Part shown: positions 6,871 through 62,646 of the stretch, in pieces
Position numbering within the stretch: the stretch's first letter is position 1
How the letters are laid out: the number at the start of each line of letters is the position of its first letter
Origin: Gnetum montanum
Lineage: Eukaryota > Plantae > Gnetophyta
DNA length: 64,000 nt
NCBI GenBank assembly: GCA_015680685.1
Contig: MNCI01001967.1
Span: forward strand, 281,066-345,065
Direction: 5' to 3'
Notes under the pieces: generated by a model
What the model was told of the DNA's origin: nothing
The model's input: only the letters and a program-made list of their open reading frames with translations
Databases searched by the model: none
Made by a program: the position numbers and the translations under genes

Positions 6871-8179
6871 TGTGATTCACCATGTATATGCAAGCATCCT
6901 CCAAGATTAATAACTTGAAACAAAGCTAAGATAATGATGATATATGTATTTCACCATCTATATGCCAGCATCCTTTAAAATTAATTTTAAAAATTGACAA
7001 AGATGGTTGACATATAATAGTAAAGGGCTTAGACAGCCCTACGTTGCCCAATATTAATAAAGATGAATTTAATAGAGGAGGTGTTGTAGTTGCCCTACGT
7101 TGGCTAACATGCTTTGCACCTAGATGTATGAACACCCTGAACGCTAGCTTGCGATTGAATCTACCCTGAATGCTAGGTTGGAACCATGTTCCAAGCATGC
7201 ATACATGTAATTTTTTTAAAAATTTGAATTTAATAACCTTATAGATCTGGTTAGATTTCGGTTCTGTAGTAAACTGTGCCATTGTTACCCCCGTCAATCT
7301 CCAATGCAGCAATGCCCAACGTCTTGAGCCCAAAAAAACCGTTCTCGTTGGTTCCCTCTGCAAACATGATACTGTCGGTAGCTGTTGTATCTAATCTCTA
7401 CTTGGGGTGACGTATTTGAGAAACATGGCACCGAGAAGTGAGTTGAGTTTTTGATTAATTGAATCGCAAGGGGATTTCGGTTGTATTAGCCTAAAGTTTC
7501 GTTTAACTGTTTTTTGGGTTTACCTGCAATTGCAGCCGTTACAACCCATCCTAATTCAATCTAGGTTTTTATTTATTTATTTTTATGTGTTGATGCTTAT
7601 TTAGATTTAATCAAGAACTCACTAAATATTTGAATTGGTTGAGAGGGATGGTAAGATGCTTGTTTTTCAAGTTGGAAGGTGGGTTAGAACTGTGCATCAC
7701 TCTACCAAATCTCTCTGATCCACTTGGCCAGATTAATATTGATGGTACCATATCGTTTTAACAAAAGGGAAAATTTTTTCAGTTCTTTGATCTATTAAAA
7801 TCATCTGGCAGATCCTGAAAATGCACACAAAAGTAAGTTTGAAATATAAAATAATGAATATCAGAGATTTATTCTTTCATAAAAAAATAGTGGACATTAC
7901 AGTTAGGTAGAAATCTAATCAACAGCGGGAAGAAAACTCGTCTAAAAATCTCAGACAATGAAATTTATTTAAACATGAACACAGTTGAGAGACCATCCCA
8001 CAGATCTTGCTTCCATACACTGCTAAATATATAGTTCCCTCATTAGGACTGAATAACATGCCAATAGGTGACATCACTAGCCTCCTTATTTTTAAGGCAT
8101 ACAAAATATATAGTCTTTAAACTTGCATTTGTTACATGAGCCCTCAGATGCTGCATCTATGGTTTCAACTTCTTAGATT

Positions 8180-13885: not shown

Positions 13886-14496
13886 ATTTTTTTATGTTAT
13901 TTGAAAGGATAGATGAAAAGAGTCCTTGTAGCAATTGCCAAATGTTTTTTTAGTTTGCAAGTAATCGAATATTTCATTCAGGTATATAGGGAACACACAA
14001 AGGAAGTAGTCACAAGCAGTTATTTCTTTTAAAGCTATAAAGAACTTTGTAGATCGTTCTGAAGCTGTGTAGAGAGAATATAGCATTTGTATTTAGGCAG
14101 TTTTGGGATGCTTTAGAACAGATACTGAAGCTTCTCTGCATCACAGACAGTACTGCTAATTAATAGTTAGTACTTATGAAATAAAGAAAACGCTGGAAAA
14201 CAAGCAGTAACGCAATTGAAATAGTTGAAAGCTACAATCTGCCATAATAAATATTTTTTTCTTTCATGTTCCATAAATCTGTAACATGCATTCATGAATT
14301 TTTATTGCATCCATGCTTCGGTTTCCATGAAGTCCTAATATGATTTAACTTGCCAAAATGATACTGTTAATTATGGTTCAATAATTTGTCAAGGATTTCA
14401 GGTTATTAGGAAAGTCAACTTGTAACATTAACTGTTTAAAGATGTACAACCGTTTGTGATGTACATGATAATTAATTATAGTTAGTAAAGATAATT

Positions 14497-14656
14497 GGAG
14501 GGGTGTTGGAACCCGCAATAATTACAATATAGGTACAACCCAAGATATATAGTCCACATAGAACTTTATAACTCAGGATTGCCCACCAGAATTGAACCCA
14601 TGACATAGAGTTTCTAAATCAAGAGTCTTACCACTAGGTTAACACCTTATTTAATA
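14497..14656 (-). mobile_element. tRNA-derived SINE (160 bp), no poly(A), 3' end GCGGGTTCCAACACCCCTCC
   Basis: 13-bp TSD AGTAAAGATAATT (14484-14496 / 14657-14669). Pol III A box TAACCTAGTGG (14641-14631) and B box GGGTTCAATTC (14599-14589). Homologous copy at 41427-41559. Confidence 0.85.
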
Positions 14657-14733
14657 AGTAAAGATAATTAATATGGTATCAGATAGATAAATGGCCATGG
14701 TAAGCATCATTAAAGAGTTCACTTACTATAGTG

Positions 14734-35633: not shown

Positions 35634-35645
35634 TGGTATCAGAGC
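35634..35645 (+). promoter_or_regulatory. Primer-binding site (tRNA-iMet)
   Basis: TGGTATCAGAGC 2 nt after the 5' LTR. Confidence 0.9.
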
Positions 35646-35658
35646 TAGATCTAAAGAG

Positions 35659-41426: not shown

Positions 41427-41559
41427 GGTAGTAATACTATTGATTTGGATGTTCCAAGTTATGGGTTTGATTTTGGTGGGCATTGCTAAGTTATAAAGTT
41501 CTAATTTATCTATATGTCTAGGGGGTAAATACTCTTAAAAACATTTTGGGTTCCAACAC
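41427..41559 (+). mobile_element. Second copy of the tRNA-derived SINE (5'-truncated in the A box)
   Basis: 16-bp TSD CACAAGTTTAATTCCA (41411-41426 / 41557-41572). Body aligns to 14497-14656 (ATGGGTT..TGGTGGGCA..AGTTATAAAGTTCTA..GGGTTCCAACAC). Confidence 0.8.
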
Positions 41560-42966
41560 AAGTTTAATTCCAAACATTATGATAAAACACATGCTAATGT
41601 GGGGTCATAGTAAAAAATATGTTTGGGCTATGCAATCAGGTAGTTAGTCAGCCATAGAAAATTATGATCAAATCTTTTGCCTACCTTAACATTCAACCCA
41701 TGTTAATGGGATAAAGGCACCATGATAATGATGAAATAAGTAATTATTCATAAATTTTTTCATCCATGTCTTTGTGAAGGAAATATATCATCTTGTACTT
41801 TGATTGAAGAATTCCTATTTGACCTCAATGATTTGGTAAAGATTTTAATAGTAAACTTATAATGGTAGTAGCTAAAAGTTGCTTTAATTATTCCTAGACT
41901 TTTGATTGTATACTCTATATACTTTTGTTTTGAAAAGAATACTTGATAGACATTAAAGGCTGAGATTTGCCTATACTTAGATAACTCTTTCATTATGCTT
42001 AATATACTATTTCTACTTTGACTATTAATAACATTGATATAGTTTGCTATGTTGCATGCTTAAGATGATACTTTTAGCATATTGGTCCATTTGATTAGTC
42101 GATAACGGTGGGTCAAATTTAACTTTTCCTTGAAAAAGTATATTTTTATGATCTACATTGTAGACTCCATTGACAATGTTATAAGATTTATTTTAACTAT
42201 AAATTAGTTATATCCATAGATCATAATTACTTTGGTGGATAATTTTTGAAAAAGTCAAAACTTTTGTAAAGTTAGAATTTAAGATTATAGGTCTTCCTAG
42301 GAAAATTATTAAAGATGAAATTATTTTCTCATTTAGTAATCTTCAACAATATTTTATTAAAATGGATAAGTGGAATAAAATATGTATAATAAATATCTAC
42401 CATAACTTGCCTAATTCTTATAACTATTGTCATTTTGAAGGTCACTTGTTTAATTATACTACTGTGAAATTAGATAAAGAATTTATATGCTTTTGTACAA
42501 GGTTTTGATACAACTTTTATTATTTCCAAAACAAACAAGGGTAACTTTTTTTCCTAAGGCAATATATAAAGGTTGAAGCTAAAATAATTGCAAGACAATA
42601 TGGGATAGGAGAAAGACTTGTATTTGCAGAACTCATGAAAGTGCAAAGTGTGACTTAAATTTGTAACGTGAGTAAACTTTTCCTACAACAAGATAATCAA
42701 GCTACCTTAGTGTTGATTGTACCATTATGCGTAATGATGATTGTTATCAATGATTTAAAGGAATGGAAAGCAAGGAACCAACAAATACAAGGGAATTGTC
42801 AACATAATATAGAATAAGCATTCAAAGTTGCATGTTGCAAGTGGAAGGATGGATGAAGAAAGATGATGGCGAAAGCATGTTACAAAAGGGGTCAATGAAC
42901 AGCACGGTGAGAATCAACATTATTATTCTCCATTAAAACCATGGCAGAAAATGCCACGTCTTGTTT

Positions 42967-43968
42967 TTAGGAGGAAGGCATGCCACGCTGGCCAGCATGA
43001 CTAACCAGGGGAAAGTGTTGCTTGTACCATGCTGCTGACTCAGTGGCCTTGGTCACAGTGTTGCCACAGTCAACCAAAAGGTTGTGCCCGCTGACGTAAG
43101 CAGCCTCGTCAGACGCCAGATACAGCACCGCCTGCGCAATGTCCAGCGTGGTCAAATAATGTCCCGGCAAGGGAGACCTCTCTGCCACGAAGGCACAAGC
43201 GTTGTCCATCGTGGCATCCATGTCAGTCAACATGGCGTTAGCGTGGGCCAGCAGCAGCGTGGGAACTCCATCCGGAGACACCATGTTCACCCGCACGCCG
43301 TGGGCCCGGAGTTCCACGCTAGTGCTCCGCATGAGGCCCACGAGGCCGTGCTTCGCCACGCAGTACGAGTGTGGGCTCATGCCGCCCACCACAGCAGCAA
43401 CCGACCCAGTCAGCACTATGGAGCCCCTGCCACGCGGCTTCATGTGGCGCGCCGCGTGCTTCACGCCGAGGAGGGCCCCACGCAGGTTCACGGCCAACGT
43501 GTAGTCGAACTCGTCCACGGGCGTCTCGTCGATGGGGCCCGTCGCGCCGATGATGCCGACGTTGTGGTGCACAATGTCCAGCTGGCCCCCGCCCGCAGCC
43601 GCTGCAGCGTCCACTGCTGCCGCCACCTCGGACTCCTTGCGCACGTTGCAGGCCACGTAGGATGCCAGGTCGCCGATATCTGCCGCCGTGGCAGATGCAT
43701 CCTCCACGTCAGCAATGACGACCCGCGCGCCGTGCACTGCCATGAGGCGGGCTGTCGTCTGGCCGATCCCCGTGGCGCCACCAATGACCAGCGCAGTTTT
43801 GCCCTCCAGCCTGTCACCCAATTCTTGCCACGTCAGCGAAGAGTATAAAAACAAAAAAGCATTTCAGTGCGAAGTTTCGTAGAAAGGAGACTCCTCAAGC
43901 GACCTCTTTGCCTCTGGAGAAGGAATGGCGCACATGTTGCGGAGGAGCCTACGCCTTTGCTGTTTCAT
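42967..43968 (-). CDS. Short-chain dehydrogenase/reductase, SDR110C (ABA2/TS2/secoisolariciresinol-DH-like) family; exons 43968-43904 and 43810-42967 (302 aa, or 291 aa from ATG 43935)
   Basis: 93-bp GT..AG phase-2 intron in KR|LEGK, the usual position in this family. GxxxGIG motif, catalytic N-S-YxxxK (YCVAK), GVRVN.VSP, YVSGHNL.VD. Open frame, GC-rich codons. Confidence 0.9.
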
Positions 43969-46900: not shown

Positions 46901-47587
46901 GTGCTTGAACGGAAACTATGAAAACCCTCACAGTACTCAATCTGTCGTATGACTAATTCAAAAACAAACCGTGCCACCAGTGCCACAAATCTTGCAGAGG
47001 ACCAGAGATGGAGTATCACCAAAATTTTAAAAAAGCTTTTCAAGCAAAATCCTAACTGAAATCACTAGTAGCAGTTGTAACATCCTGCAGAAGAGCATAC
47101 CTCAAGAAGACTGTCGCCTGGGACATCATTGGTGCTCAGAAAACCAAGCTGTGGATCTAAAATGTCTCCGGCAACTCAAATCAGGTGAGGTGAGGCTCTG
47201 AGTTCAATCCAGATTCCAGTGGAGGAAGCAGACGCTACCGTAAATTTTTAAAGATAGGATTAGCACAGAATCCATGTAGCAGATCAGGTTGGAAAACACA
47301 CAAAGTCAAGCTCGTAACAGAAGCTGCGACGGCATGAACCACGAGATTGGTGGGTGCTGAGCAGTCGAGATCCGGTCACATGTCATGGTTTTTGTTCGTC
47401 ATGGCGCACCATGTCGGATCGTTACGATTAACAGCGTCTTTTTTCGCTATGTACTATGCTGTCATGACCGTTCATTACAGCTGTTACGCATGATAAAACA
47501 AAATGTTCCCCGTATCATTTTATTTTCAAGCTTATGCTTTTGTCAACCCTTATAATGTGTTTATTTTTCCCGTTTGCCACATGTAGC

Positions 47588-48421
47588 AAGTTCTTTCTAA
47601 CTTTGTTGTGCATAAGTTGCATAATAATATTCCTTGGTATGAAGATTGGTTTTGGCCTGACGGTTCCCCTCTTTGCTCTTTACGTATCTCTAAAGCCAAA
47701 TCTTGGTTTCATGCGCAAGCTTTTCAATTTTCCACTATAAATAGACGTTGGAGTTTACATTTTGAGGATCACCAGTGGAAAATTATTTTTCGTCGGATTT
47801 GGACTTCCAAGGCCCAACCTAAGCATCATTTCTTGTTTTGGTCCTTGGTTCATCAAGGTCTTCCCATCGGACATAGGCTTCATTTGTTAGGAATTGATCA
47901 TCCTAAATGCCCCATTTGTAAAGCGGATGATTCTTTTCAACACGTCTTTTGGGATTGTTCATTCTCTCAATACATTTAGAAATGGTGTCAATCTCTCCGA
48001 GTCTTCCTTCCTAATCATTTTATTCGTTTTCCTCAATGTATCCTTCAAGATGATTGTGTTAAGCGTCATCTTCAAAAAGCCTGGAAAATCCTCCTATTTG
48101 AGATTATCTTCTTTATTTGAAAATGTCGTCTAGATGCTTGGTATAAACACAAACTACAATGAATTTGACTACGGTATGAAATGCTCTATTGCTAGTAATG
48201 TTCAACTTCACTGTCGTGGCTTTCTCAATAATATTACCTTTTCCAACTGAATTCTCTTTGAATTAGGTGTATTGATCTCCTTCTTCAGTTGTCATTCCGG
48301 GGGTGCGATAAGCTTTTGTCTTGTTGCAGGTTGACTGGGGGTCATCTTGCAACATTGGGCTCTGTTAAGGTTTTGGATTTAATTTTTCTTCTGCAGCTAG
48401 CACATCACCTTAACAACCCCC
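47588..48421 (+). mobile_element. 5'-truncated L1 (zf-RVT + 3' UTR) ending in a C-run, no poly(A)
   Basis: 11-bp TSD CCACATGTAGC (47577-47587 / 48422-48432). PKHHFLFWSLVHQGLPIG..CPIC...DSFQHVFWDC, homologous to ORF2 near 54550-54700. Ends ACCTTAACAACCCCC. Confidence 0.85.
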
Positions 48422-50357
48422 CCACATGTAGCTGGCAGATTCAATTTCATCCATTTCTTTGCAGATTGTTTCTTGTCAGGCTTTATTGGCTTCAAAAGGG
48501 TATGTCGCAGCACTGTTGCAGCGTTCCTGTTGCAGGTGCCTGCAAACATACCACAGACGTTTTATGGGATCTGACACCATTAATATTTTTTATAAATTTA
48601 CGGAATGCAAATACGTTATCTGGTATTTGACGGTTTCACAAAAGGCTGTAATAGAGAAAAAAAGAACCCTAATTCTTTACGGGAATCCATAATCCACCTT
48701 GTCTTATTTGTGTACTTGTAATAAACCCATATGATGCATTCACGTGAACAGGGAAGAGCGTGGAGGGTATTAAATTTGCAGTTTAAGCGCGGATTACATC
48801 AACCTGATATTGAAATGACTATGACAGTATATAATACTAGCTACTTCCTGGTCCACAGGTACCCTTCGAGATGAAAGCGTTTCGAGCCGTTAAAGGCATC
48901 ATTGGCCAGGAGCTTTGTGGTAGCTATTCAATATTCAATGATAGATATCGATACTAGAGACATTGGACAGCGGACACAAAAAAAAGGTACCTACTTCTGT
49001 AATTTAAAAACTTGAAGGGAATTCATAGGGACCTGTATTATCACATCCTTGGTGCAGGATTTCCCAGAAACGAAGGACTTCCTATCAAGTTCGAAGATTT
49101 GTGTTCGGCTTTGGCTCATTAACTCTTATCTTTTTGGAACTTTGTTTAACTGGATGAACATTAAGGCTCACGGGTAATGATCCTTTTACTTTTGTCAAAT
49201 TTTACTTTGATTTTTTTACTTTGATTTTTTGTAGAAAGGTTGAATGATCCTTGAACTTATCAATTTTTACTTTGGCATTTCATGGAAGGGTTGAATTTAA
49301 CTGGTTTGAGTTACTCAAAAAAATTAGGCTTTCACTCATTTTCTGAGGATCCTACATACTCCTCTAACCCATGTCCCTTTCAATGAGTATTGAGGCTCCA
49401 AGTAATATTCCTTTAAAGACTTTTGTCAACAATACATGGGTTAGGAGTAGTTACATGAAGTGTAAGGTGTGGCTAGAAGATTAGGACCGGTTACTCATCG
49501 CATAGGCTAGTTTAGATTTGTTCTGCTATTACTTAGAATTAGAAACTTTTACTCTCACTTCATGATTATTAGGATCATAATGGCCAATTCAGCTATCTCA
49601 CCATGAGTTAAACCATACACATTGATTTTACTAACTCATGTGGGAAGACAACGATCGTGAATGCTAACTAATTACTGATATAATCACATTGCCTTATCTG
49701 CAAAGTTTGATTGGGATTTTGCATGAACACTTGTATCTCATATGCTTGGGTGTTGGATATTCCATCGCTCATTAGTACAAAAGAGGTATGAACAATGAAT
49801 CAATGTAGGAGAAATGCAAATGCTTAAATGGATGTTGAATGTTATCAAATGAGATAAATTATACAATATAGACATTAGAGAGACTTGGAGTGGCTTCTAT
49901 TTCAAATAAGCTACACAAATAGTGTCTTAAATGGTTTAGACATATGCAATGAAGATAGATAACAAGCCTATAAAACAAGGTTGCTACCTAACTATTCCAA
50001 GAAAGCCACTCAAAGAAAGACCAAAAAGATATGAGCAAAATTTGTTAGGATAAGACTAATTTGATGATGATTTAAGTGATTCACCATGTATATGCAAACA
50101 TCTTCCAAGATTAATAAGTTGAAACAAAGCTAAGATAATGATGATATATGTATTTCACAATCTATATGCCAGCATCCTTTAAAATTAATTTTAAAAATCG
50201 ACAAAGATGGTTGACATATAATAGTAAGAGGCATAGTCAGCCTTACGTTGCCCAATATTAATAAAGATGAATTTAATCGGGTAGGCAAAGATGCTTGACA
50301 TAACATATAATAGTAAAGGGCATAGTCAGCCTTACGTTGCACAATATTAATAAAGAA

Positions 50358-51221
50358 ATGGCTCGTCATTTTATTTTGGTAGAATTATCTGACGCTTCAC
50401 AGGTCGAAACGGCTCTCTCAAAAAAAAATTTTCCAACTAGAAATGCAACCCTTATCGCACGCCCCTGGAGTTTTGACTTTAATGTCAATGACCCCGCTTT
50501 TAATATAATTCCTTGTTACATAGAATTGCCCAACCTTCCACACATTTTCTCCCCGGTTGAGAGGGACATAGTTAGCACCCTGGGCCCTATTATTTCCGAT
50601 CATTGTAAGGCGATCAATGGAACTCAAATTCGACGTTACTGTATTGAACTGGATATAGCCCGTCGGAAGACCTCATTAAACCTCGGTGCTGGTGGAAAAA
50701 TCTTTACCCAAAAAGTGGACTATTTTTACCTTCCAAACTCATGTAGCTATTGTCATAGGGCCGAGCATCATATCTCGGTGTGTCCCATCCTAACCAGGAA
50801 AAAACAATCAGTAGCCTCTCAAAAGACTGGTTCCCTAGTCACACCACTAGTCGGCCCATCCTCCGTACCCTTCAAATTCGGATCTCCTCTCCCAACATCT
50901 CCTAAATCCTCCTCTCAACCTAGCCGCTCCAAGCTCCAGAAACAACAGTCAGGTACTTACACCTCCACCCAGGTCATCCCTTCAAACGTTGTCAAGAACT
51001 CATTCTCGGAGGATGAGTTCGTGGTGGCCAGTGGTAGAAAACGAGTCAAAGCTTCCCTTCGTTCTACTTCTACCTCCACCTCCTCTTCACTAGACACTTC
51101 CATGGCCCTTGTCCCCACCAACAACTCCTTTGCCCTCTTGTCAGGAACAAAGGAAACTGATACTTCGACTCCCAAACCTTTGGTTACCCTCCCATCCAAC
51201 CCACCCCTGGTTTCCTCATGA
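50358..51221 (+). CDS. L1 ORF1 C-terminal part (DUF4283-like end, CCHC knuckle, Ser-rich tail)
   Basis: ..ARPWS..IPCYIELPNLP..LG..RYCIELD..QKVDYFYLPNSCSYCHRAEHHISVCP. The N-terminal codons in the ORF track (50337-50356) come from flank/TSD. Confidence 0.85.
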   Translation: MARHFILVELSDASQVETALSKKNFPTRNATLIARPWSFDFNVNDPAFNIIPCYIELPNLPHIFSPVERDIVSTLGPIISDHCKAINGTQIRRYCIELDIARRKTSLNLGAGGKIFTQKVDYFYLPNSCSYCHRAEHHISVCPILTRKKQSVASQKTGSLVTPLVGPSSVPFKFGSPLPTSPKSSSQPSRSKLQKQQSGTYTSTQVIPSNVVKNSFSEDEFVVASGRKRVKASLRSTSTSTSSSLDTSMALVPTNNSFALLSGTKETDTSTPKPLVTLPSNPPLVSS

Positions 51222-54200
51222 ATCTCTTTTCTTGGAATGTTCGAGGCCTTACTGATAGGCTTCGACGAAAGCGAGCAGGCAACTTTATATCTAGTCTTAA
51301 TTCGACTTTTGATTTCATTCTTCTTCAAGAAATTAAGATTTCCGCCAACCTTTTATCCTATTCCGCCCATTGGTTTCTTCCTCACTCCTCAATCCTAGCG
51401 ACATCCCATGCTTGTGGGAAAGGAGGAGCGGCCATTCTCCTCTCACCCTATTGGAAAACTAAAATCCTTCAAAGCGGTTCGGATTCTGGGCATAGAGTTT
51501 CCTGGGCCACTTTCTCCTCCCAGCATGGCCCCTTTGGCATTTGCTCGATATATGCCCCAAACGACTCCACAGAACGGGCTCTCCTTTGGCATGAACTTGC
51601 CACTTCTCTCCCCCCAATGCCTTGGATATTCGGAGGAGATTTTAATATGGTAGAATTCCCTCAAGATAAGCTCGGAGGGGCATTTCTTCAATTGCCCAAT
51701 CTCGAGTATCAGGCCTGGTCTGCGTTTACGAAACGATTTTACCTCTCAGACGGAGCAGACAACTCCATGAGCGCTTCCCCCCATCGATTCACCTGGAGCA
51801 ATCTCCGTCTAGGGCAAGCTCGCATCTATAGTAGGTTAGATAGGTTCCATTTCTCCACCCTCTCCTTTTGGCAAGCTTGCTCTGCCACTACAGTCCATCA
51901 TCATGCCACCTTATCCGACCACCTTCCTATCTCCATATCTATCCAGCTACATGGTAGCCCTAACCGACAACAATTCCATCTTTTCAGACTGCACAACAAA
52001 TGTTTTTCTTCCCCCACTGCCCAACTTCTTCTCTCCAACCTTTGGAATGCCGAACCTAGGCCCCTAAATCAGACGGGTTGGATTAATTGGTGGCATCGTG
52101 CTTCATGTCGAGTGCGAAATTTCACTCGTTCATACGGTAAGACCGTGGCTGCTCAAGCCAAACTTGAATACAACAAAATTCACCTCACCATTGAGCATCT
52201 CACTATCAAACTAGCTCATGATCCCTTCAATACTCTAATTCACGAGGAGCTAGCTAGAGCACGCGTAGCCTTCCAACATTGGGATGTGTACCATGCAGAA
52301 AGTGCCTTAACTAAAAGTCGGCTCACTTGGTTAAATATTCAAGATGAACACTGTAAGGAATTTTTTAAATATCTTAATGCTGCTTCCCCCTCGCATGCTA
52401 TCGACAAAATCTCATGTGAGGGTACTACCATTACTGACCACAATAGTATCCTCTCTTATCTCAAGAACCACTACGAAACCCTTTTTGCTGCTACCCCAAT
52501 GGACATCTCTTCGTTCAAGGCTGCCACCCCTGATTATCCTCGTCTTATTAATCCTACTATGCTACAAAGCCTTGAAGCTGATATTACTTTAGCGGAGCTA
52601 CAGGAGGCTTGTTCCAAGTTACGTCGCGGTAAGGCTCCTGGTTATGATGGGTTTCCAGCAGAATTTTTTCAAAATCATTGGGATTTGGTGGGCAAGGACC
52701 TTATGCAGGTCATTAACGAGGCTATCTTCACTGGTTCCCTCGGGCCCAATCTAAATCAAGGGGTAATTCGTCTCCTCCCCAAGTCTGGGGATCTAACCGA
52801 TATCTCCAATTGGCGTCCCATAACTCTTCTCAATGTAGTGTATAAAATTTGGGCGAAGTGCCTTGCCTTACGGCTGAAAAAAATTCTCGGTCAGATCATA
52901 TCTCCTCAGCAAACAGGGTTTGTTCCGGGCAGGTATATTTTAGACAATGTGGTAGCGGCGTGGGAAGGTCTCAAGTGGGCTGAGGACGATGGACAAGATA
53001 TTCTCCTAGTGAAACTAGATTATGCCAAGGCTTATGACAACATTAAGTGGGATTTTATCTTGCAGACTATGACCAAATTGGGTTTTGGACCCAAGTTCTT
53101 GCATATGGTGACATGCTTATTCTCAGATGCTACTGCGAGAATTGCCACTACCTTCGGCATTACCTCTCCCTTTCCAATCCATAGGTCTGTGCGCCAAGGT
53201 TGTCCTCTCGCCCCCTATCTCTTCATCATTGCATCAGACTTTCTTTGTCATCAAATAAACCTGGACATTAAAACTAAAGTTCTCACTGGGGTTAGCCTTT
53301 CCTCCTCTCAACAACAGCTTCTCAATATGCACTTTGCCGATGACTCCTTTTTTCTAGTTCAAAACACAGCCACCAATTTGCACCGCCTCTTATCAAGGGT
53401 GGAGCAATATTGCACACTCTCAGGTTCCATAATTAATTGGAATAAATCCTCTGTTTATAGCTTTAAGGGCAATTACAACCATGTGACCCACTATAAGTGG
53501 AAGCAACTTCAAGATCAAGACATCGTTAAGATTCTGGGAATCCCTTTCCGCTTCAGAGGCTCAACATCTATCCTTTGGGAGCAAGTTATTCATCGAATTC
53601 AAAAGAAACTCGATAAATGGAAAACTAAGCCCCTCACACTTGCGGGTAAATACCTTATCTGTAAGTCCATATGCGCATCCACCCATGTGTATTACTCTTC
53701 GTGTTGGGCCCCTTCCCAAGCTGCCTACCAGAAGTTAGAACGGTTATTCCGTGACTTTATGTGGTCCTCCAAGGACTCTCAAAAAGGCTTTCATCGTGTC
53801 GCTTGGACTATTGTTACTCTCCCCAAGAATAAGGGCGGCTTAGGCCTTTTAAACTCCTATAAGCAAGGAATTACCTTGGTTGCTAAGTGGTTGGTACAAC
53901 ATTTAGATGCCTCAAATATTATAGGGACCCTCCTCCAATTAAGGCTTCATCAAGCCTTTCCTAAAAATAAGCCCTTCTGGCAAGACATCCATTTCGTTAA
54001 TTGGATTATTTCCCCCCTCACTATCATTCTTCCCGGATCTCATGTCTTCAAAAGCATTTGGAGGGCCTGGCAAATTGTTCACACTCACATAGACTGGACT
54101 ACCGTTAAAATCAATCCTACTATCCTCTCTAAAGTGTGTCCGTGGTGGTTACCTCTGTCACCCGCTCCCCTAGCTATCACAAATGCTAAGGTGGCTACCT

Positions 54201-55060
54201 CGTGGTATCGGAAAGGTGTCATTTCCTTGAATTGTCTTAGGCTAGCTAGTCGTTGGATTTCAGGGGTCGAGTTTAACACTTTGTACGGGGAGTCGGCTGC
54301 AATGAAACATTGCCTTGTTCAGATTTACTCCTTCCTCCACAGTCACTGGCACCTGGATGTTACCGTGCCAAGCCTTTTCCATGGCCTGCAATGGCGTAAT
54401 GGGGTTAGACTCCTTCCCTATCGGCCATCTGTCCCCTTTCATCTCATGCATGACCCATCTGCAGTCGTTCAACGTTGCAATAGATATTGGCACAAACAAG
54501 CGTCAGAATCATTTTGGATCCCTCTCTTCCAACATATTTGGAAACTTCCGACCCTCCCCAAAATTAAGCAGTTCCTTTGGTGTCTTCTCCACCATGGTCT
54601 TCCTATCGGAAAACGTCTAGAATATCTTGGGATTCCTAATCCCACTTGCCCTCTATGTGGTGGACTAGATGACTTTGTCCATGTGTTTTGGCAATGTCCC
54701 TTTGCTCAACATGTGTGGCAGTGGACTTCTAAAGCTTTTCCATCCTACCAGTTATCTCAAGAGGCTGCCATATTCGGATTCTTGAACATTACTTCTACTA
54801 ACCTTAACTTTCTGTGGAAAGTTCTTAGACCTATTATTTTACATTATATTTGGAAGCGAAGATGCAATGTTCTATTTCAAAAGACCGAGTATTCTAACAA
54901 ATGTTTGCTTACCAGGTTGGAGATGTTGCAGATCTTTCGGCTCACCTATTTTCAACTCACATCTCAAGCATCCAAGTTCAATTTGGACAGTCATCAATTG
55001 GTTCATCTCCTGCAGCTCTGGGACAATCCTATGTGTCTTAATTACACTTCGCATCAGTAA
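51218..55060 (+). CDS. L1 ORF2 (APE endonuclease - reverse transcriptase - zf-RVT), 1280 aa, uninterrupted
   Basis: SWNVRGL, LQE, IYAPN, GGDFN, RLDRF, SDHLP; KAPGYDG, WRPITLLN, KLDYAKAYD, RQGCPLAPYLF, FADD; CPLC..DDFVHVFWQC, IWKRRC. Confidence 0.97.
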   Translation: MNLFSWNVRGLTDRLRRKRAGNFISSLNSTFDFILLQEIKISANLLSYSAHWFLPHSSILATSHACGKGGAAILLSPYWKTKILQSGSDSGHRVSWATFSSQHGPFGICSIYAPNDSTERALLWHELATSLPPMPWIFGGDFNMVEFPQDKLGGAFLQLPNLEYQAWSAFTKRFYLSDGADNSMSASPHRFTWSNLRLGQARIYSRLDRFHFSTLSFWQACSATTVHHHATLSDHLPISISIQLHGSPNRQQFHLFRLHNKCFSSPTAQLLLSNLWNAEPRPLNQTGWINWWHRASCRVRNFTRSYGKTVAAQAKLEYNKIHLTIEHLTIKLAHDPFNTLIHEELARARVAFQHWDVYHAESALTKSRLTWLNIQDEHCKEFFKYLNAASPSHAIDKISCEGTTITDHNSILSYLKNHYETLFAATPMDISSFKAATPDYPRLINPTMLQSLEADITLAELQEACSKLRRGKAPGYDGFPAEFFQNHWDLVGKDLMQVINEAIFTGSLGPNLNQGVIRLLPKSGDLTDISNWRPITLLNVVYKIWAKCLALRLKKILGQIISPQQTGFVPGRYILDNVVAAWEGLKWAEDDGQDILLVKLDYAKAYDNIKWDFILQTMTKLGFGPKFLHMVTCLFSDATARIATTFGITSPFPIHRSVRQGCPLAPYLFIIASDFLCHQINLDIKTKVLTGVSLSSSQQQLLNMHFADDSFFLVQNTATNLHRLLSRVEQYCTLSGSIINWNKSSVYSFKGNYNHVTHYKWKQLQDQDIVKILGIPFRFRGSTSILWEQVIHRIQKKLDKWKTKPLTLAGKYLICKSICASTHVYYSSCWAPSQAAYQKLERLFRDFMWSSKDSQKGFHRVAWTIVTLPKNKGGLGLLNSYKQGITLVAKWLVQHLDASNIIGTLLQLRLHQAFPKNKPFWQDIHFVNWIISPLTIILPGSHVFKSIWRAWQIVHTHIDWTTVKINPTILSKVCPWWLPLSPAPLAITNAKVATSWYRKGVISLNCLRLASRWISGVEFNTLYGESAAMKHCLVQIYSFLHSHWHLDVTVPSLFHGLQWRNGVRLLPYRPSVPFHLMHDPSAVVQRCNRYWHKQASESFWIPLFQHIWKLPTLPKIKQFLWCLLHHGLPIGKRLEYLGIPNPTCPLCGGLDDFVHVFWQCPFAQHVWQWTSKAFPSYQLSQEAAIFGFLNITSTNLNFLWKVLRPIILHYIWKRRCNVLFQKTEYSNKCLLTRLEMLQIFRLTYFQLTSQASKFNLDSHQLVHLLQLWDNPMCLNYTSHQ

Positions 55061-58007
55061 TCTCTGCAAGGAAGTTTTCCCTTCATTTTGTGGATTCACC
55101 ATTGGCATTCCCTAGCTCTTGGCTTCATCTACTTCTATGTCATTCTATTTTGTAAAATGCTAGTTTGTGCGAACATTTGGTTGTGTCCCAACTTGAGGTA
55201 CCTCCTCTTATACTAGTTGTTTTTTTAAGGTGTCCCAACTTGAGGTACCTTAACCCTACGACTTCTTCAAGTTGTTGTAATTGATGCCCCTTTAATTTCA
55301 ATAAAATTTCTTTTCGGGGTCCGACACCCCCCAATATTAATAAAGATGAATTTATTTGGGGAGGAGTTGTAGCTCTCGTTAGCTCACATGCTTTGCACCT
55401 ACATGTATGAACACCCTAAACGCTAGCTTGCGATTGAATCTACCCTAGCTTGTGATTGAATCTACCCTGAATGCTAGCTAGGTTGAAACCATGTAATTTT
55501 TTTAAAAATTTGAATTTAATAACCTTGTAGATCTAGTGGAAGTTCGGCTCTGTAGTAAACTGGGCCATTGTTACCCCGTTAATCTCCAATGTAGCAATGC
55601 CCAACGTCTTGAGCCCAAAAAAACCGTTTTCGTTGGTTCCCTCTGCAAACATGATACTGTCGGTAGCTGTTGTATCTAATCTCTGCTTGGGGTGACGTAT
55701 TTGAGAAACATGGCACCGAGAAGTGAGTTGAGTTCTTGATTAATTGAATCGCAAGGGCATTTCGGTTGTATTAGCCTAAAGTTTCGTTTAATTGTTTAAC
55801 TGTTTTTTGGGTTTAGCTGCGACTGCAGCCTTTACAACCCATCCTAATTTAATTTAGGTTTTTATTTATTTATTTTTATGTGTTGATTCTTATTTAGATT
55901 TAATTAATCAAGAACTCACTAATTGAATTGGACTATGGTTTAGAGGAGCAAAATGCTTGTTTTTCAAGTTGGAAGATGTAGGTTAAAACTCTGCATCACT
56001 CTACCAAATCTCCCTGATCCACTTGGCCAGGTTAACATTGAGGTTACCATATCGTTTTAACAAAAGGGAAAAATATTTCAATTCTTTGATTTATTAAAAT
56101 CATCTGGCAGATCCTGAAAATACACACAAAAGTAAGTTTGAAATATAAAATAATGAATATCAGAGATTTATTCTTTCATAAAAAATAGTGGACATTACAG
56201 TTAGGTAGAAATCTAATCAACAGCGGGAAGAAAACTCGTCTAAAAATCTCAGACAATGAAATTTATTTAAACATGAACACAGTTGAGGACCATCCCACAG
56301 ATCTTGCTTCCATACACTGCTAAATATATAGTTCCCTCATTAGGACTGAATAACATGCCAATAGCAGTGACATCACTAGCCTCCTTATTTTTAAGGCATA
56401 CAAAATATATAGTCTTTAAACTTGCATTTGTTACGTGAGTCTTCAGATGCTGCATTTATGGTTTCAACTTCTTAGATTAAAAAGTTGCTTGGTTTTATGT
56501 GGGTTCATGCAGATGTATCATGGGATTCTTGTTGCACGGCCACTTATATTGGTTTCTGAATTCTTTTGGGATTTGATTTCCATATGTGTAATCTATAGTG
56601 ATTCAGGAATCGTTGGATTCAACATCTTCAGCAATTCAATAGCTAGTGATTCGAGCAACCAAACATGCCCTTAGATTTTGTCCTTGAAAAGGGTGCTTGG
56701 GGGTTAAGGATGTGAGGTTCAATTTGGGCATAAGGTTGTGAGAATTCTTAATGGGTGTTCAAGGAATTGGAAAGTTTACTTCCAATAAGATGTAACATGA
56801 TGGTATAGCTTTTCAGTGTATCCGGTACATTAGTTACACTGGAAAACTTTATTGTCAAAAATGATATGTTCCTTAAAACAATAGTTTGTAAGAAAGACTG
56901 CTCCTCTTTTTCTCTTCTAGAGTTTTATAGAAATTATCAATTGCTATGTTGACTTGTCATTTGTTGCTGCATTGTAGAGGATATGGATCAAAGATTGCTC
57001 CTTTTGTTTTCAAGGTGGGTAAGCATTGTTGCTTATTAGATGTAACATGCTAAACTCAAACTATTTGGTAGAATGTCCAAATTTGATTTTGAAAGGTTAT
57101 GTAAGGAGCATGACTATTTTCTTGATATGACAAGTAATAGAGAAATTTGGAAAACATATAGAAAACATATATATGATCATCATTGACTTGGAAAAATCAT
57201 ATGATAGAGTACCAAGAAGTATTATTTGGTAGCCCTTACACAAGTATGAAGGAGTTACTACAAAAATTACAACAACTTGTGAAATAACCTTTGACTTTCC
57301 AATCATAGTATCTACATCAAGGGTCTATGATTAGCTTATACGTATTTGCTATTGTTATGGTTGAATTGGCAAAGAAAAAACATAATGAAATCTATTGGTT
57401 TATGCTATTTGTAGATGACATTATGTTGGTGGATACAATTTAGATACTTGGAGTGTTTGGTTCAAGTGGATGGTGAGATTAACAATGATGTTACAAGCAA
57501 AATTAAAGTAGGATGGAAGAAATGATGAGAAGCTAGTGATGTGCTTTGTGATAGAAGAATCCTTGCTAGGTTGAAGGTTTAGTCTTAACAAATTGCTATT
57601 AGATCTGGAATTCTTTATGGTGTAGAATGTTGCCCTATTAAAAAACATCAGACATAGCATGTGCATATGATAAAGATGCATATGTTGAGGTGGATGTTGA
57701 TGTGATAGGAAAGATTGAATTAACAACTCTTTTATTAGGGATAATTTGGGAGTAGCTTCCATAAATGAGAAGATTAAAGAAAGCCCTCTTAGATGGATTG
57801 GTCATGTGTTAAGAAGACTAGAGAATGCTCCTATTAAAACATGTTGCTTCATTAAAGATGAAGGCAACTAACAAAGAGGTAGATTAAAACATACTTGGTT
57901 TGCTTGCATAAAGAAAGCTATCCAAGATTTGGGTATTAATGTTTATTTGGTTCTTAATAGAAGCGAAGGATGTAAAAGAACTCATATAACCAACCCCATG
58001 TAGTTGG

Positions 58008-58305
58008 TGATGAGACGCGATATGCACAAGTCGTGATATCGCGTACGCGATGTCGCAGCCGCCGCGATATTGCGTACGCGATGTTGCAATTGCCGTGATA
58101 TCGCATCCCCTGCGATATCGCGTACGCGATATCGTGGTCTGCCGCCAAATCTATAAATAAGAGGCGGCACTCCCCTCATTTCCCATCCTAGGCTAGAAGT
58201 AGCAAAGCTCTGGCGGATTGATCACCCCAGAGATAGAATATTTTCCATGTGCCTACAGTAGGAGTCCCCCAAGTGAACGGTTCTTTATTCGAGCAGCTTT
58301 GTACC
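58008..58305 (+). mobile_element. First ~300 bp of a third Athila-family LTR, inserted in the RTE tail and itself interrupted
   Basis: Starts TGATGAGACGCG directly after RTE ..TAGTTGG. Homologous over its whole length to the start of the minus-strand LTR (59291 to ~59017). TATAAATA at 58152-58159. Confidence 0.85.
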
Positions 58306-59462: not shown

Positions 59463-62180
59463 TCATGTAGTTCCTAGTGGCGATGGCTCCTCCATGGGTG
59501 CTTTTCCTTTGTCACGTGCTCCAAGCTTTGAAGATTGATGACGCTGAAGAATAGTCTGGAGCTTCTCCTCTTCGGTCTGAGGGTCTTGTGCCGTCCATGC
59601 TGATGCTCCGATGTTTGATGGAGTCGGCACTTCCCACGGACAGGGTAGTTGCAGGAACATCTGATTAGCTTTGACGTACCACGCCGCGAACACCCGTCGT
59701 TCCTCTTCGTAGGCTCGGGCTTTGTATTTGTATTCATGAAGTTCTATTAGCTGTCGAGCCAAGTCGGTTGCCACATCTTTCTGTCCTTGGTAGCTTTCTT
59801 TTACCACCGCGAGTTCAGAATTTGCAACATCTAGTTTTTCAGCCAACTTCTTTCNNNNNNNNNNNNNNNNNNNNNNNNNNNNNNNNNNNNNNNNNNNNNN
59901 NNNNNNNNNNNNNNNNNNNNNNNNNNNNNNNNNNNNNNNNNNNNNNNNNNNNNNNNNNNNNNNNNNNNNNNNNNNNNNNNNNNNNNNNNNNNNNNNNNNN
60001 NNNNNNNNNNNNNNNNNNNNNNNNNNNNNNNNNNNNNNNTGGATCTCCTTCTCCAGGATCTGTTTATACATCCCCACCTGATCACAGAAGTGCTCCTTCA
60101 GCTTCTCATGTCATTTAGCCTCATTCTGCCACGCACTAATCTCGATGGCTGACTTCTGTCGAATAGCGCGTACCTCCTCCAATGAGAGGGTCTGATTTTC
60201 TCTGGCTAAACGGCTTACATCTTGGTTGACTCGGATGAATTGTTCTCGCAGTCGATGAAAGTGCTCATCGAGAACATTCTTTTGCTTCTCCACAGAAGTC
60301 AACCGAAGGTTATCTGCAACCAACTGCTTATTCTCTTCTTGCAAGGCCTTGAGTGCCTTAAGATGCGCATGAGTTTGCACCTTTGCTGCGGAGGCATCCC
60401 AAGTGGCCGTCTCCTTTTCTTCTGCCACCTTCTTATTTTCTGCAATTAATTTGGTTAGCTACTCGATTTTAAAATTGTTTAACTGGTCTGCGGGAACCAA
60501 TTGCAAGGGATCCCGCTGTGTTGCTTGTAAGGCGATGAGCTGCTCTTGTAATTTCTGCACTTCAGCCTTAGCATTCTCAGCCCTTACTTCGGATATGACC
60601 AGTTTCCCCTTTGTCAAAGTGAGGTCTGACTGTATTACGGTTACATCCTGAGGGATGTCAAACAGGGACGTTAAAACTTGTCCTGTTTGAAGCAATCTGT
60701 CCAATACATCCTCATGTTCAGCAGGCGTCATTGAGGTTCCGGCAATGGTTTGAGCATCCCGTGCTCCTGAAAGATCTGCCGGTGGCACAACAGGTACATT
60801 AAAAGACTCTTTGATGTGGTCAGCGACCACCTCAGCTGCTCCCGCGGCATCCTGGTGTTGCATGACCACCACAGTGGCCCCTTCACCAGTCTCTAATTGA
60901 ACTTGAAAAGATGCCGCGTTTCCAGAGATCTATTGTGACCATCTGCTTTCCCCTCCTCCTGTCTGCAGTGACAACTCACCCCTTGTGCGATCCACTGAAA
61001 TTGTAGGCTGGCTGGCATCATCGATGACATGGAAAAGATTGGCGTCATCACGACTTCCCCAACTGATCGTCTCAGCAATGACCCTCAAATGGCTCATTGA
61101 CGATCTATAGTCTTGCGGTGGCAGCTGATCCTGGCCTGTACTGGGTCTTGCTTCTTGTTGTTGGCTGGGACCTGTGGCTAGAGGTTGACTGGGTTCTGCA
61201 AGTTGAGTTGCAGGAGGTCCAGTCATTTGTTCTTCATCTTCTTCATCTGGTCCCAACTCTTCGCCAGTGCTCTTTCTTGGAGCTGGCGCCTTTAGCAATT
61301 CAGCGTAAGAAGCATTTTGGGCTTTTCGAAGGACATCATTTGTATATCCCCAAATCCCAGCCCGACGGCACAGTTTTTTGATAAGACAAGGAAATGGGAG
61401 TGCCATTTTTTCTGTCTTCCGTTCCTCGAATCGCCTTAGGATCTCCGTTAAATATAGATGAGGAAGGTTAGCGTTAACCTTTCCCATCAACACTGCACAT
61501 CCTCTTGCCCCGTACGTTGATATTCTTTTTAAACCTTTTGTGGGGAAGAGGTGATAGGTTCCAATTTTGAAATAAACTCGCTCTTTCATGGTCAGCTCAC
61601 CAAAAGCTTTATCTCTGCCATAAGCCTTCTCTAGCCAATCTTTTCGCACATCAGGGTCAGATCGGGTGGATAACCGAGCAACATGGGGGCCTGAATTCGG
61701 AAGGTTTAACACTTCCGAAATCGCCTGTGCATAAAAATCCACTGTCACACTACCAATGTTTACCGTGGTGCCTTGCTCCTTATTGTGCCAAAATAGGTAC
61801 GTTTCGCCTAAGTACCAAGCACCTTGTTCAGAGAGGACAGGCCATAAGGGAGATCCTTTGAGGTGATCCCTAACAGCCTCAGGAGCAAACTCTGCAAAAG
61901 ATTCGAAGTTGAGTTCCACAATCACCGAAGCGATTATGGACTTCGTGTGGATAGCCTGAACACATTCCGGGGGCAACGTGAGTTGTTGTCCCAGTTCAGG
62001 CGCAGCAGCTCCTCCTTCTGCCTGCCCGGATCGTCTGGTAGGAGGTTCATCTTGATGGATGCTGAATGAATGCACCTCCTGTTCATTATGTTGTCCGGCA
62101 GGGACTTGCCTTCGACCTCTCCTAGGTTGTTTTGCTCCACCTTGGGTCGGACTCTTCTGCTGGGAGCGTTTTGGGGCCAT
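59463..62180 (-). pseudogene. Env-like/extra ORF, one ~905-930-codon frame broken by three in-frame stops and an N gap
   Basis: ORFs 60930-62186, 60459-60872 and 60111-60428 and the start of 59463-60077 are in one frame (TAG 60932-30, TAG 60461-59, TGA 60113-11). Motifs VDFYAQAISEVLNLP and LPFPCLIKKLCRRAGI resemble Athila/Calypso env-like proteins. Confidence 0.85.
59855..60039. other. Assembly gap (185 N)
   Basis: Run of N. The old paralog has ~253 nt (4851-5103) at the equivalent place. Confidence 0.99.
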
Positions 62181-62646
62181 CTGCAATCACACGGGCCAAT
62201 ATTAGTAAGGTTGTTTAGGAAATCAGGTTATACCTTACTACGCCTTAATTAAAGATCATTTATTATTGTGTGATCGTGCCTGAAAATTATAATGATGGGT
62301 CCTATGACTTAGGTGGATGTGCGTTTTAATATCCCGGTATACTTAAGGGCGTATGATTTTTGGCACAATTTTCGAGGTGTTAGTATTAATTACCCTAATT
62401 GATGTCCTTTGGGCGATGAAAAATTTTAAAAAATTTAGGCACTTTTCGGCAAGTGTCTCTCCCCCACGACTAAACTGAACACTCCGGGTTCAAGTAGGTT
62501 CAAACGGAATTCAAATCGGAGTACCAGCGCGTGAGATATAGTTGAAAAAGCAAGGGTCACTCAAGCGCAAGTCGTAGAGAAAGAATTCAAAAACTTCCCC
62601 CCCGCGTGAATGCCAAATGAAGCTAAGTGTTGTGGTGGGGGGTTCC

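What the first reader, a model, noticed from the sequence alone, without database searches (positions are those of the whole stretch)
55290..55346. Intact L1 ends in stem-loop + C-run instead of poly(A), with the empty site in the same window
The duplication shows the pre-insertion sequence GTTGCCCAATATTAATAAAGATG (7043-7065), so the element end is fixed: AATAAA-ATTTCTTTTC-GGGGT-CCGAC-ACCCC-C joined to a target beginning (CC)CAAT. Canonical L1 priming uses a T-rich nick and poly(A); here a G-ending primer would pair with a C-ending RNA. With 47588-48421 and the two SINEs, three of four junctions have C-containing overlap. Inference: an L1 lineage with altered endonuclease preference and sequence/structure-based 3' recognition. 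The 3' UTR also has a 21-bp direct repeat GTGTCCCAACTTGAGGTACCT (55183, 55230).
Basis: partly seen in the sequence, partly recalled or inferred. Interest (0 to 1): 0.85.

Follow-up and report, generated by a model that had tools for sequence, protein, structure and literature searches.

The report
Plant L1 retrotransposon without poly(A) tail
A very abundant plant L1 jumping gene and a small SINE that borrows its 20-base end insert with no poly(A) tail, ending in a short C-rich motif, so this L1 lineage probably starts DNA copying at that motif rather than on poly(A) as L1s usually do.

Summary
A plant L1 with both reading frames open lies at 50357-55331, flanked by a perfect 15-base target-site duplication (TSD). 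Two uninterrupted copies of the target, at 7049-7063 and 50253-50267, fix its end at AATAAA-N10-GGGGTCCGACACCCC(C) with no A-tail.

Four other TSD-bounded insertions also lack A-tails:
- two SINE copies that share about 20 bases of this tail;
- a fragment of a second L1 family;
- an 83-base sibling copy seen in RNA reads.

Four of the five junctions overlap the target by 1-3 bases, mostly C. The family is about a thousandfold deeper than its flanks in DNA runs of three related organisms.

RNA reads carrying the tail continue for 2 or 12 further bases and then into poly(A). Reverse transcription therefore probably starts inside the C-run, upstream of the mRNA tail. This is "stringent" template recognition.

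The stem-loop is weak and shows no covariation. Five junctions cannot show altered endonuclease preference. The copy has no 5' UTR.

Stringent plant L1/SINE pairs are published. I found no description of a tail-less, C-ended one. I rate it a new variant of a known kind. Unchecked notes of this scan report the same tail on two other pieces of this genome.

The parts
50357..55331 (+). L1-type LINE copy, 4975 bases, both ORFs open, no 5' UTR and no A-tail. The end could be 55329-55331 depending on how many C belong to the TSD.
   Evidence: Boundaries come from the TSD and two empty-site copies. Summed DNA contig depth is 4.7e3-6.2e4 inside the element against 12-78 in the flanks, with sharp steps at both ends, in three runs.
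50342..50356 (+). Left copy of the target-site duplication, CAATATTAATAAAGA.
55332..55346 (+). Right copy of the target-site duplication, CAATATTAATAAAGA.
7049..7063 (+). Uninterrupted target (empty site) in the paralogous segment.
   Evidence: Self-BLAST and colinear alignment with the rejoined flanks.
50253..50267 (+). Second uninterrupted copy of the target, in the upstream unit of an old tandem duplication of about 82 bases (50205-50285 and 50286-50356 onward).
50358..51221 (+). ORF1, 287 aa, with a DUF4283-like domain and a CX2CX4HX4C zinc knuckle. Its stop overlaps the ORF2 start (ATGA).
   Evidence: Pfam DUF4283 E 1.1e-5, 25.6 bits against a cut-off of 27.2, profile positions 26-106. 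Sequence read.
51218..55060 (+). ORF2, 1280 aa: APE endonuclease, reverse transcriptase and C-terminal zf-RVT, with no RNase H.
   Evidence: Pfam. The best solved structure is human L1 ORF2p 8sxt, E 4.6e-50, colinear over residues 3-894. The endonuclease catalytic residues and the RT FADD motif are conserved.
55061..55331 (+). 3' UTR, 271 bases.
55183..55250 (+). Two exact 21-base direct repeats GTGTCCCAACTTGAGGTACCT, at 55183-55203 and 55230-55250.
55300..55305 (+). AATAAA polyadenylation-signal-like hexamer, 26-27 bases before the element end.
   Evidence: RNA reads turn into poly(A) 2 or 12 bases past the element end.
55312..55331 (+). Terminal tail motif TTTCGGGGTCCGACACCCCC, shared with the SINE. 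It holds the possible hairpin GGGGT/ACCCC (55316-55330) and the C-run (55327-55332).
   Evidence: The 15-mer matches the SINE end with 2 mismatches. Chance expectation is 0.15 matches in the whole window on both strands, and the match sits exactly at a TSD-defined 3' terminus.
14497..14656 (-). First SINE copy, 160 bases, ending GCGGGTTCCAACACCCCTCC. Its TSD AATTATCTTTACT lies at 14484-14496 and 14657-14669. No A-tail.
41427..41556 (+). Second SINE copy, 5'-truncated, ending TTTTGGGTTCCAA(CAC). Its TSD CACAAGTTTAATTCCA lies at 41411-41426 and 41557-41572. Copying began 4-7 bases short of the full tail.
47588..48421 (+). 5'-truncated fragment of a second, distant L1 family (31% aa identity to this ORF2), ending ...ACCTTAACAACCCCC(CC). 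Its TSD CCACATGTAGC lies at 47577-47587 and 48422-48432. No A-tail.

Best explanation
This is a young copy of a hyper-abundant plant L1-clade LINE family that uses 'stringent' template recognition.

The proposed mechanism is as follows. ORF2p recognises a short terminal motif, roughly YCGGGKTCCRACACCCC. It begins target-primed reverse transcription within or next to the terminal C-run, not on a poly(A) tract. The nicked target strand often pairs with the last 1-3 template bases. The start point wobbles by a few bases. A SINE that carries the same 20-base tail is mobilised in trans.

The element's own AATAAA makes its mRNA end a few bases beyond the C-run, with a poly(A) tail. Initiation is therefore internal, and neither the short downstream stretch nor the poly(A) is copied into DNA.

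Shown here:
- exact element ends;
- absence of A-tails;
- the shared tail;
- family abundance;
- polyadenylated RNAs that carry the tail.

Inferred: that ORF2p binds the motif, that initiation is internal, and that base pairing with the primer matters.
For: 1. The exact end is fixed by the TSD and two empty-site copies, and no A-run follows it.
2. Four more TSD-bounded insertions have no A-tail.
   - The first SINE copy ends ACACCCCTCC.
   - The second SINE copy is 5'-truncated and ends CCAA(CAC).
   - A fragment of a second L1 family ends AACAACCCCC(CC).
   - An 83-base sibling was reconstructed from RNA loose ends. The 13-mer ATAATGTTGCTCA lies 8 bases upstream of where the reads begin to match (55248) and again directly after ACACCCC at 55330. 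Its first 12 bases are absent from the window.
3. The L1 and the SINE share the terminal roughly 20 bases and nothing else.
4. Four of five junctions show element/target overlap of 1-3 bases. C makes up only 17% of the window, so my rough binomial estimate for chance is about 0.02.
5. Contig depth in the L1 body is about 1000 times that of the flanks in DNA runs of organisms A, B and C. It drops between the bins ending at 55333 and starting at 55334. No poly(A) loose end was listed for any DNA run, although loose ends backed by only 1-3 contigs were listed.
6. In the RNA run, 184 reads continue past 55332 as CG plus poly(A), and 77 continue past 55330 as a 12-base flank plus poly(A). Coverage is 3'-biased, at 206 against 22-56 in the preceding bins.
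7. ORF2 is an intact L1-type enzyme.
8. A lead only. The segment that aligns with human ORF2p R385/N388, the adenine-specific contacts described in PMC10830416, reads AASPSH here. It is mostly R and N/K in the angiosperm L1 proteins I aligned.
Against: - Only five junctions were seen, and genome-wide sibling ends could not be fetched.
- The DNA evidence against A-tails in siblings is indirect. The loose-end table was truncated, with 2311 rows not shown.
- The RNA library appears oligo(dT)-primed, so it cannot see non-adenylated L1 RNA. The 184 'CG plus poly(A)' reads could come from a single sibling locus whose genomic flank is A-rich.
- The shared tail is short, about 20 bases.
- The hairpin is weak and shows no covariation.
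- The tails of the two L1 families share only ACA(A/C)CCCC, which could be convergence or chance (3 matches against 1.06 expected).
Confidence: 0.62

Rival explanations
1. The lineage has an endonuclease with changed nick-site preference, cutting next to G/C rather than at TTTT/AA, and that preference rather than RNA recognition explains the C-containing junctions.
For: C or CC lies immediately 5' of the unambiguous TSD at 4 of 5 sites: TTG|CCCAAT, TTG|CCACAT, AGT|CACAAG and GAT|CATAAT. None of the sites is a classical TT|AAAA.
Against: Five sites cannot define a preference. The same data fit primer-template pairing after an ordinary nick. With the overlap assigned to the element, the TSDs start A-rich (CAAT, ACAT, AAGT, ATAA, AATT). 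The first SINE copy inserted at ATT|AATT with no C. The endonuclease catalytic residues are canonical and the specificity-loop region is not obviously different. This reading does not exclude the main explanation.
Confidence: 0.2
2. The transposing RNA is not polyadenylated at all. Its 3' end is made exactly at the C-run, for example by hairpin-dependent processing, and reverse transcription simply starts at the physical RNA end.
For: DNA copies end in the C-run with variable numbers of C. The RNA library is blind to non-adenylated RNA (adaptor and poly(A) loose ends).
Against: AATAAA lies 26-27 bases upstream of the end, and adenylated RNAs carrying the tail exist. The second SINE copy started 4-7 bases inside the tail. 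SINE transcripts made by RNA polymerase III would run into the flank up to a T-run, so they need internal initiation anyway. That last point is general knowledge and was not tested here.
Confidence: 0.15
3. The terminal C's are not templated. The reverse transcriptase adds G's to the primer before copying, so the true element end is ...GACA or ...ACAC.
For: The length of the C-run differs between insertions: 4 C, 4 C plus TCC, 3-5 C, and 5-7 C.
Against: ACACCCC is present in the L1, in the first SINE copy and in the sibling seen in RNA. The first SINE copy has CCCCTCC, which is not a pure run. Target overlap of C or CC would then be coincidence.
Confidence: 0.08
4. This is an ordinary poly(A)-primed L1 whose tail was lost from this copy by deletion or shrinkage.
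For: 224 of 233 flowering-plant L1 families end in (A)n (PMC3472496).
Against: The right-hand TSD abuts the C-run exactly, and the rejoined flanks match the empty site base for base. Four further insertions are tail-less too. The copy is young, with open ORFs and a perfect TSD.
Confidence: 0.03

Closest known systems
Maize LINE1-1_ZM with ZmSINE2/ZmSINE3, and related monocot L1s (Ohshima 2012, PMC3472496)
   Same: A plant L1-clade LINE whose conserved 3'-end sequence is shared with tRNA-type SINEs. It was taken as evidence for stringent template recognition inside the L1 clade.
   Different: There the shared tail is about 45-50 bases, with a solid hairpin backed by compensatory changes. Here the tail is about 20 bases, with a weak and unsupported hairpin. 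That paper counts 224 of 233 flowering-plant L1 families as (A)n-ended and suggests the ancestral L1 needed both the tail and poly(A). Here there is no A-tail at all. I did not check the 3' end of LINE1-1_ZM itself.
Chlamydomonas L1-1_CR with SINEX-3_CR (PMC3472496)
   Same: An L1-clade LINE/SINE pair with a shared 3' end.
   Different: [quoted passage not shown]
Eel UnaL2/UnaSINE1 and zebrafish ZfL2 (L2 clade; Kajikawa and Okada 2002; PMC4176376)
   Same: ORF2p recognises a 3' tail, the SINE is mobilised through the shared tail, and there is no poly(A).
   Different: The clade is different. The stem-loop is proven, and the tail carries short tandem repeats on which the primer slips. Here there is an oligo(C) run and no repeat.
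R2 elements (from my own knowledge of the R2 literature, not checked here)
   Same: Reverse transcription starts at the end of the 3' UTR even when the RNA continues downstream. The DNA copy has no A-tail.
   Different: R2 has a restriction-like endonuclease, strict rDNA site specificity and a single ORF.
RTE-clade LINEs with Au-like SINEs (Nishiyama and Ohshima 2018, PMC6007223)
   Same: The first base of the TSD correlates with the 3'-terminal bases of the element. This points to template-primer pairing at initiation.
   Different: These are RTE-clade elements with (TTG)n or T-ended tails and a T-stretch target signature.
Human L1 (Thawani et al. 2023, PMC10830416)
   Same: The ORF2 architecture is colinear, and the endonuclease and RT catalytic residues are conserved.
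   Different: Human ORF2p needs a poly(A) tract, which it reads through adenine-specific contacts, and its insertions carry A-tails. Here there is no A-tail, and the residues aligned to R385/N388 are S and H.

Membership tests
L1-clade LINE | N-terminal APE-type endonuclease with catalytic residues | tested here: met
   Pfam Exo_endo_phos, E 1.5e-7. N, E, Y..N, D.N, D and D-H align with the human L1 endonuclease catalytic residues.
L1-clade LINE | RT closest to L1 ORF2p, followed by a C-terminal Cys/His motif | tested here: met
   Human ORF2p 8sxt scores E 4.6e-50 and is colinear over residues 3-894, against about 1e-21 for R2. FADD is present. zf-RVT scores E 9.9e-12. No formal clade phylogeny was built.
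L1-clade LINE | A separate ORF1 upstream of ORF2 | tested here: met
   ORF1 is 287 aa with a CX2CX4HX4C knuckle. The DUF4283 match is just under the Pfam cut-off, 25.6 against 27.2 bits.
L1-clade LINE | Variable-length TSDs and frequent 5' truncation, the TPRT hallmarks | tested here: met
   TSDs are 11-17 bases. The second L1 fragment, the second SINE copy and the 83-base sibling are all 5'-truncated.
L1-clade LINE | 3' poly(A) or A-rich tail. This is usual but not universal: 224 of 233 flowering-plant families have it. | tested here: not met
   No A-run lies between the C-run and the TSD in any of five insertions.
Stringent-type LINE/SINE partnership | The SINE's 3' tail is derived from the LINE's 3' end | tested here: met
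   A 15-mer with 2 mismatches lies exactly at the SINE terminus, and about 20 bases align. The second SINE copy has the same tail. The shared stretch is short.
Stringent-type LINE/SINE partnership | A conserved stem-loop in the tail, supported by compensatory changes | tested here: inconclusive
   A 5-bp stem is possible (-6.5 kcal/mol). In context z = 0.18. The SINE has G4 changed to U with no compensation. Too few sequences were available.
Stringent-type LINE/SINE partnership | The tail is required for retrotransposition and is recognised by the element's own ORF2p | not testable with these tools
   This needs a retrotransposition or in vitro TPRT assay.
tRNA-derived SINE | A head recognisable as tRNA, with box A and box B | tested here: inconclusive
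   ARAGORN and Rfam (E up to 1) found nothing. Box A-like TAACCTAGTGG and box B-like GGTTCAATTCT were seen by eye only.
RTE-clade LINE | A single ORF, no C-terminal zinc motif, and a microsatellite 3' end | tested here: not met
   There are two ORFs, zf-RVT is present, and there is no tandem repeat at the end.

The most novel reading that the evidence does not exclude
An L1-clade lineage in a land plant has given up poly(A) priming altogether. It is amplified about a thousandfold in at least three related species. Its ORF2p reads a roughly 20-base C-ended motif, starts cDNA synthesis upstream of the mRNA's own poly(A) tail, and has lost the adenine-reading residues that human and angiosperm L1 enzymes share. 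If so, it would be a natural counterpart to the poly(A)-dependent L1 for working out how L1 enzymes choose their template. It would also be a living example of the stringent ancestral state that Ohshima proposed for green-plant L1s.
Probability: 0.4. Interest if true: 0.7.

Novelty: new variant of a known kind. Interest (0 to 1): 0.55.

Why it matters
L1 is the textbook 'relaxed' retrotransposon. Its dependence on poly(A) explains Alu and other SINE mobilisation and processed pseudogenes, and it now has a structural basis in human ORF2p.

A closely comparable enzyme has the same domain order and catalytic residues. Yet it ignores poly(A), uses a short C-ended motif and has made thousands of copies. 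That offers a natural contrast for mapping template choice in L1 enzymes.

It also bears on whether stringent recognition was the ancestral state of plant L1s. For annotation it has a practical consequence: LINE and SINE finders that look for A-tails will mis-bound or miss this family in this genome.

Tried and rejected
**Searches for sibling copies outside the window**
- A scan of metagenome contigs for the 20-base tail gave one chance hit in a GC-rich bacterial contig.
The DNA around the nearest ORF2 relatives could therefore not be read for their 3' ends. Those relatives are P0001-P0006, at 31-34% identity, from Cryptomeria and from unnamed ENA/JGI contigs.
- The listing of cluster members gave no organism names.
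- The search of earlier findings by sequence was blank.

**Searches inside the window**
- I looked for further copies with the tail motif, with RACAMCCCC, and with a C-run plus TSD scan. Only the two L1 ends were found. The hit at 2593 is unconvincing.

**Structure**
- The hairpin is not better than shuffles, and no covariation could be assessed.

**SINE head**
- The tRNA origin of the SINE head was not confirmed by ARAGORN or Rfam.

**Endonuclease**
- The endonuclease domain alone gave no PDB hit at E 0.001 or better. Only the full-length alignment was usable.

**Literature**
- Six full-text searches found no description of a C-ended or tail-less land-plant L1 with a SINE partner. The library lacks most subscription journals, so this is not proof of absence.

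**Other**
- The source organism was not identified, because run names are coded.
Full report
**What is there**

The window is AT-rich plant DNA (35.5% G+C). At 50357-55331 lies a LINE with two open frames.
- ORF1 (50358-51221, 287 aa) has a DUF4283-like domain just under the Pfam cut-off and a CX2CX4HX4C zinc knuckle.
- ORF2 (51218-55060, 1280 aa) overlaps the ORF1 stop in an ATGA. It carries an APE endonuclease, a reverse transcriptase and a C-terminal zf-RVT.
- The best solved-structure match is human L1 ORF2p (8sxt, E 4.6e-50, colinear over residues 3-894). R2 proteins score about 1e-21.
- The endonuclease catalytic residues and the RT FADD motif are conserved.
- The nearest database proteins are only 31-34% identical. 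They come from unnamed ENA/JGI contigs and from Cryptomeria japonica. Angiosperm L1 proteins are 24-28% identical.

It is an L1-type element of a deep plant lineage.

**The ends**

The window contains a segmental duplication: 6236-7073 matches 49442-50277 at 88.7%, and 7047-9731 matches 55330-58011 at 92.7%. The older copy is uninterrupted.

Joining the left flank through 50356 to the right flank from 55347 reproduces the empty site colinearly. The TSD is CAATATTAATAAAGA, 15/15 identical. It could be 17 bases if the A at 50341 is a later substitution.

A second uninterrupted copy of the target lies at 50253-50267. The target region had already been tandemly duplicated, in a unit of about 82 bases whose copies are about 10% diverged.

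The element therefore ends ...AATAAA ATTTCTTTTC GGGGT CCGAC ACCCC(C), directly abutting the TSD. There is no A-tail.

One qualification applies. The element starts one base before the ORF1 ATG, and the DUF4283 match begins at profile position 26. This copy therefore has no 5' UTR and is probably slightly 5'-truncated.

**Other insertions**

| Insertion | Place | 3' end | TSD |
|---|---|---|---|
| First SINE copy, 160 bases | 14497-14656, minus strand | GCGGGTTCCAACACCCCTCC | AATTATCTTTACT |
| Second SINE copy, 5'-truncated | 41427-41556 | TTTTGGGTTCCAA(CAC) | CACAAGTTTAATTCCA |
| Fragment of a second L1 family (31% aa identity) | 47588-48421 | ACCTTAACAACCCCC(CC) | CCACATGTAGC |
| 83-base sibling of the main family, seen in RNA | elsewhere in the genome | ACACCCC | ATAATGTTGCTC(A) |

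- Copying of the second SINE copy began 4-7 bases short of the full tail.
- The sibling shows up in the RNA reads as follows. Loose ends before 55248 read ...GATGGGATC ATAATGTTGCTCA TAGCTTCC. Loose ends behind 55330 read ATAATGTTGCTC followed by A's. The 12-mer is not in the window.
- None of the five insertions has an A-tail.
- Overlap between the element end and the target is 1-3 C, none, CAC, CC and C respectively (counting the intact L1 first). With C at 17% of the window, overlap at 4 of 5 junctions has a chance probability of roughly 0.02. That is my own binomial estimate.

**Shared tail**

The L1's terminal 15-mer matches the first SINE copy's terminus with two mismatches. Chance expectation for such a match anywhere in the window is 0.15, and the match sits exactly at a TSD-defined end in the right orientation. 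About 20 bases align and nothing further upstream does. The second SINE copy has the same tail. This is the signature of a stringent LINE/SINE partnership.

The hairpin is less convincing. GGGGU/ACCCC folds at -6.5 kcal/mol alone. In 50 bases of context the fold is no better than shuffles (z = 0.18). The SINE changes the fourth G to U without compensation.

ARAGORN and Rfam do not recognise a tRNA in the SINE head. Box A-like and box B-like motifs are visible by eye only.

**Reads**

In Logan contigs of DNA runs from three coded organisms (A, B, C), summed word depth is 4.7e3-6.2e4 across the L1 and 12-78 in the flanks. The steps are sharp, at 50342 and between 55333 and 55334. The family is therefore very abundant and shared by related species. 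The tool warns that depth is not a copy number.

No poly(A) loose end at the 3' junction was listed for any DNA run, although loose ends backed by only 1-3 contigs were listed elsewhere. This is indirect evidence, because 2311 rows were not shown.

In a 2026 RNA run, only about 2% of the run was read. Its adaptor and poly(A) loose ends suggest an oligo(dT) and template-switch library. Coverage rises towards the 3' end (22, 56, then 206). Past 55332, 184 reads continue as CG followed by at least 28 A. Past 55330, 77 reads continue as the 12-base foreign flank followed by A's.

With AATAAA 26-27 bases upstream of the element end, the simplest reading is this: the element's own signal causes cleavage and polyadenylation a few bases beyond the C-run. 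The RNAs carrying this tail therefore have downstream bases plus poly(A) that never appear in the DNA copies.

**Mechanism proposed**

ORF2p binds the terminal motif and starts target-primed reverse transcription within the C-run. It is helped by 0-3 base pairs with the nicked target strand, and the start point wobbles by a few bases. The SINE uses the same tail in trans.

The steps shown are the ends, the missing A-tails, the shared tail, the abundance and the adenylated RNAs. The steps inferred are motif binding, internal initiation and the role of pairing.

The alternative that the transposing RNA is non-adenylated cannot be excluded with an oligo(dT) library.

'Altered endonuclease preference' is not demonstrated. 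If the overlapping bases are given to the element, the five TSDs begin CAAT, ACAT, AAGT, ATAA and AATT, which is A-rich as for ordinary L1s.

**A lead on the protein**

Human ORF2p reads the poly(A) template through adenine-specific contacts that include R385 and N388 (PMC10830416). In the HMMER alignment these positions fall on S390 and H393 of this ORF2.

In a MAFFT alignment of 23 plant relatives the same columns are mostly R and N/K in angiosperm L1 proteins. They are H/R/Q/P/F and mostly E in the proteins nearest to this one.

The 3' ends of those relatives are unknown, and the alignment across kingdoms is thin. This is a hypothesis to test, not evidence.

**Comparison with the literature**

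Ohshima 2012 (PMC3472496) counted 224 of 233 flowering-plant L1 families as (A)n-ended and 9 with no repeat. He described stringent L1/SINE pairs in maize and sorghum and in Chlamydomonas, the latter poly(A)-ended. He proposed that ancestral green-plant L1s were stringent.

Nishiyama and Ohshima 2018 (PMC6007223) showed for RTE elements that the first TSD base tracks the 3'-terminal repeat.

The present case combines these known ideas in a form I did not find described: a hyper-abundant land-plant L1 with a SINE partner, no A-tail and an oligo(C) end.

First-stage notes of this scan report the same kind of tail on two other pieces of the same genome (s1-833642, s1-825506). I could not check them.

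**Limits**

The organism is coded and was not identified.

Noticed in passing
window 42967-43854 (-): An intronless 295-aa short-chain dehydrogenase/enoyl-ACP-reductase-type ORF (adh_short_C2, E 1.6e-51). It sits in a block of 58-69% G+C surrounded by DNA of 22-39% G+C. It looks like a bacterial-type gene inside plant DNA: a possible horizontal acquisition, an organelle or bacterial insert, or an assembly contaminant.
   Followed up: partly
window 50205-50356: The L1 target region is tandemly duplicated, in a unit of about 82 bases with about 10% divergence between units. The paralogous segment at 7001-7080 lacks this duplication. The L1 sits in the downstream unit, so the upstream unit is a second 'empty site'.
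   Followed up: yes
window 56699-56725 (-) and its paralogue 8410-8436 (-): CACATCCTTAACCCCC and CACATCATTAACCCCCC resemble the tail of the second L1 family (CACATCACCTTAACAACCCCCCC at 48401-48423). This may be an older LINE or SINE end that predates the segmental duplication. No TSD was found.
   Followed up: partly
window 51933-52261: The RNA run shows a pile of reads in the opposite first-mate orientation (depth 50-114). 77 molecules begin at 51933, and foreign sequence (GGTAAGGCAGTGGC...) joins at 52166. This is probably a chimeric or antisense transcript through another copy of the family.
   Followed up: no
window 12270-12332 (-): A 63-base stretch 70% identical to the SINE head. It may be the head of another SINE family or a decayed copy.
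   Followed up: no
window 51218-51221: The ORF1 stop and the ORF2 start overlap as ATGA. This fits translation of ORF2 by termination-reinitiation.
   Followed up: no
window 36862-40423 and 59463-62186: Fragments of LTR retrotransposons: integrase, RVT_2, and an ORF similar to Transposase_32. Internal repeats lie at 35074-41042 and 37250-39600.
   Followed up: no
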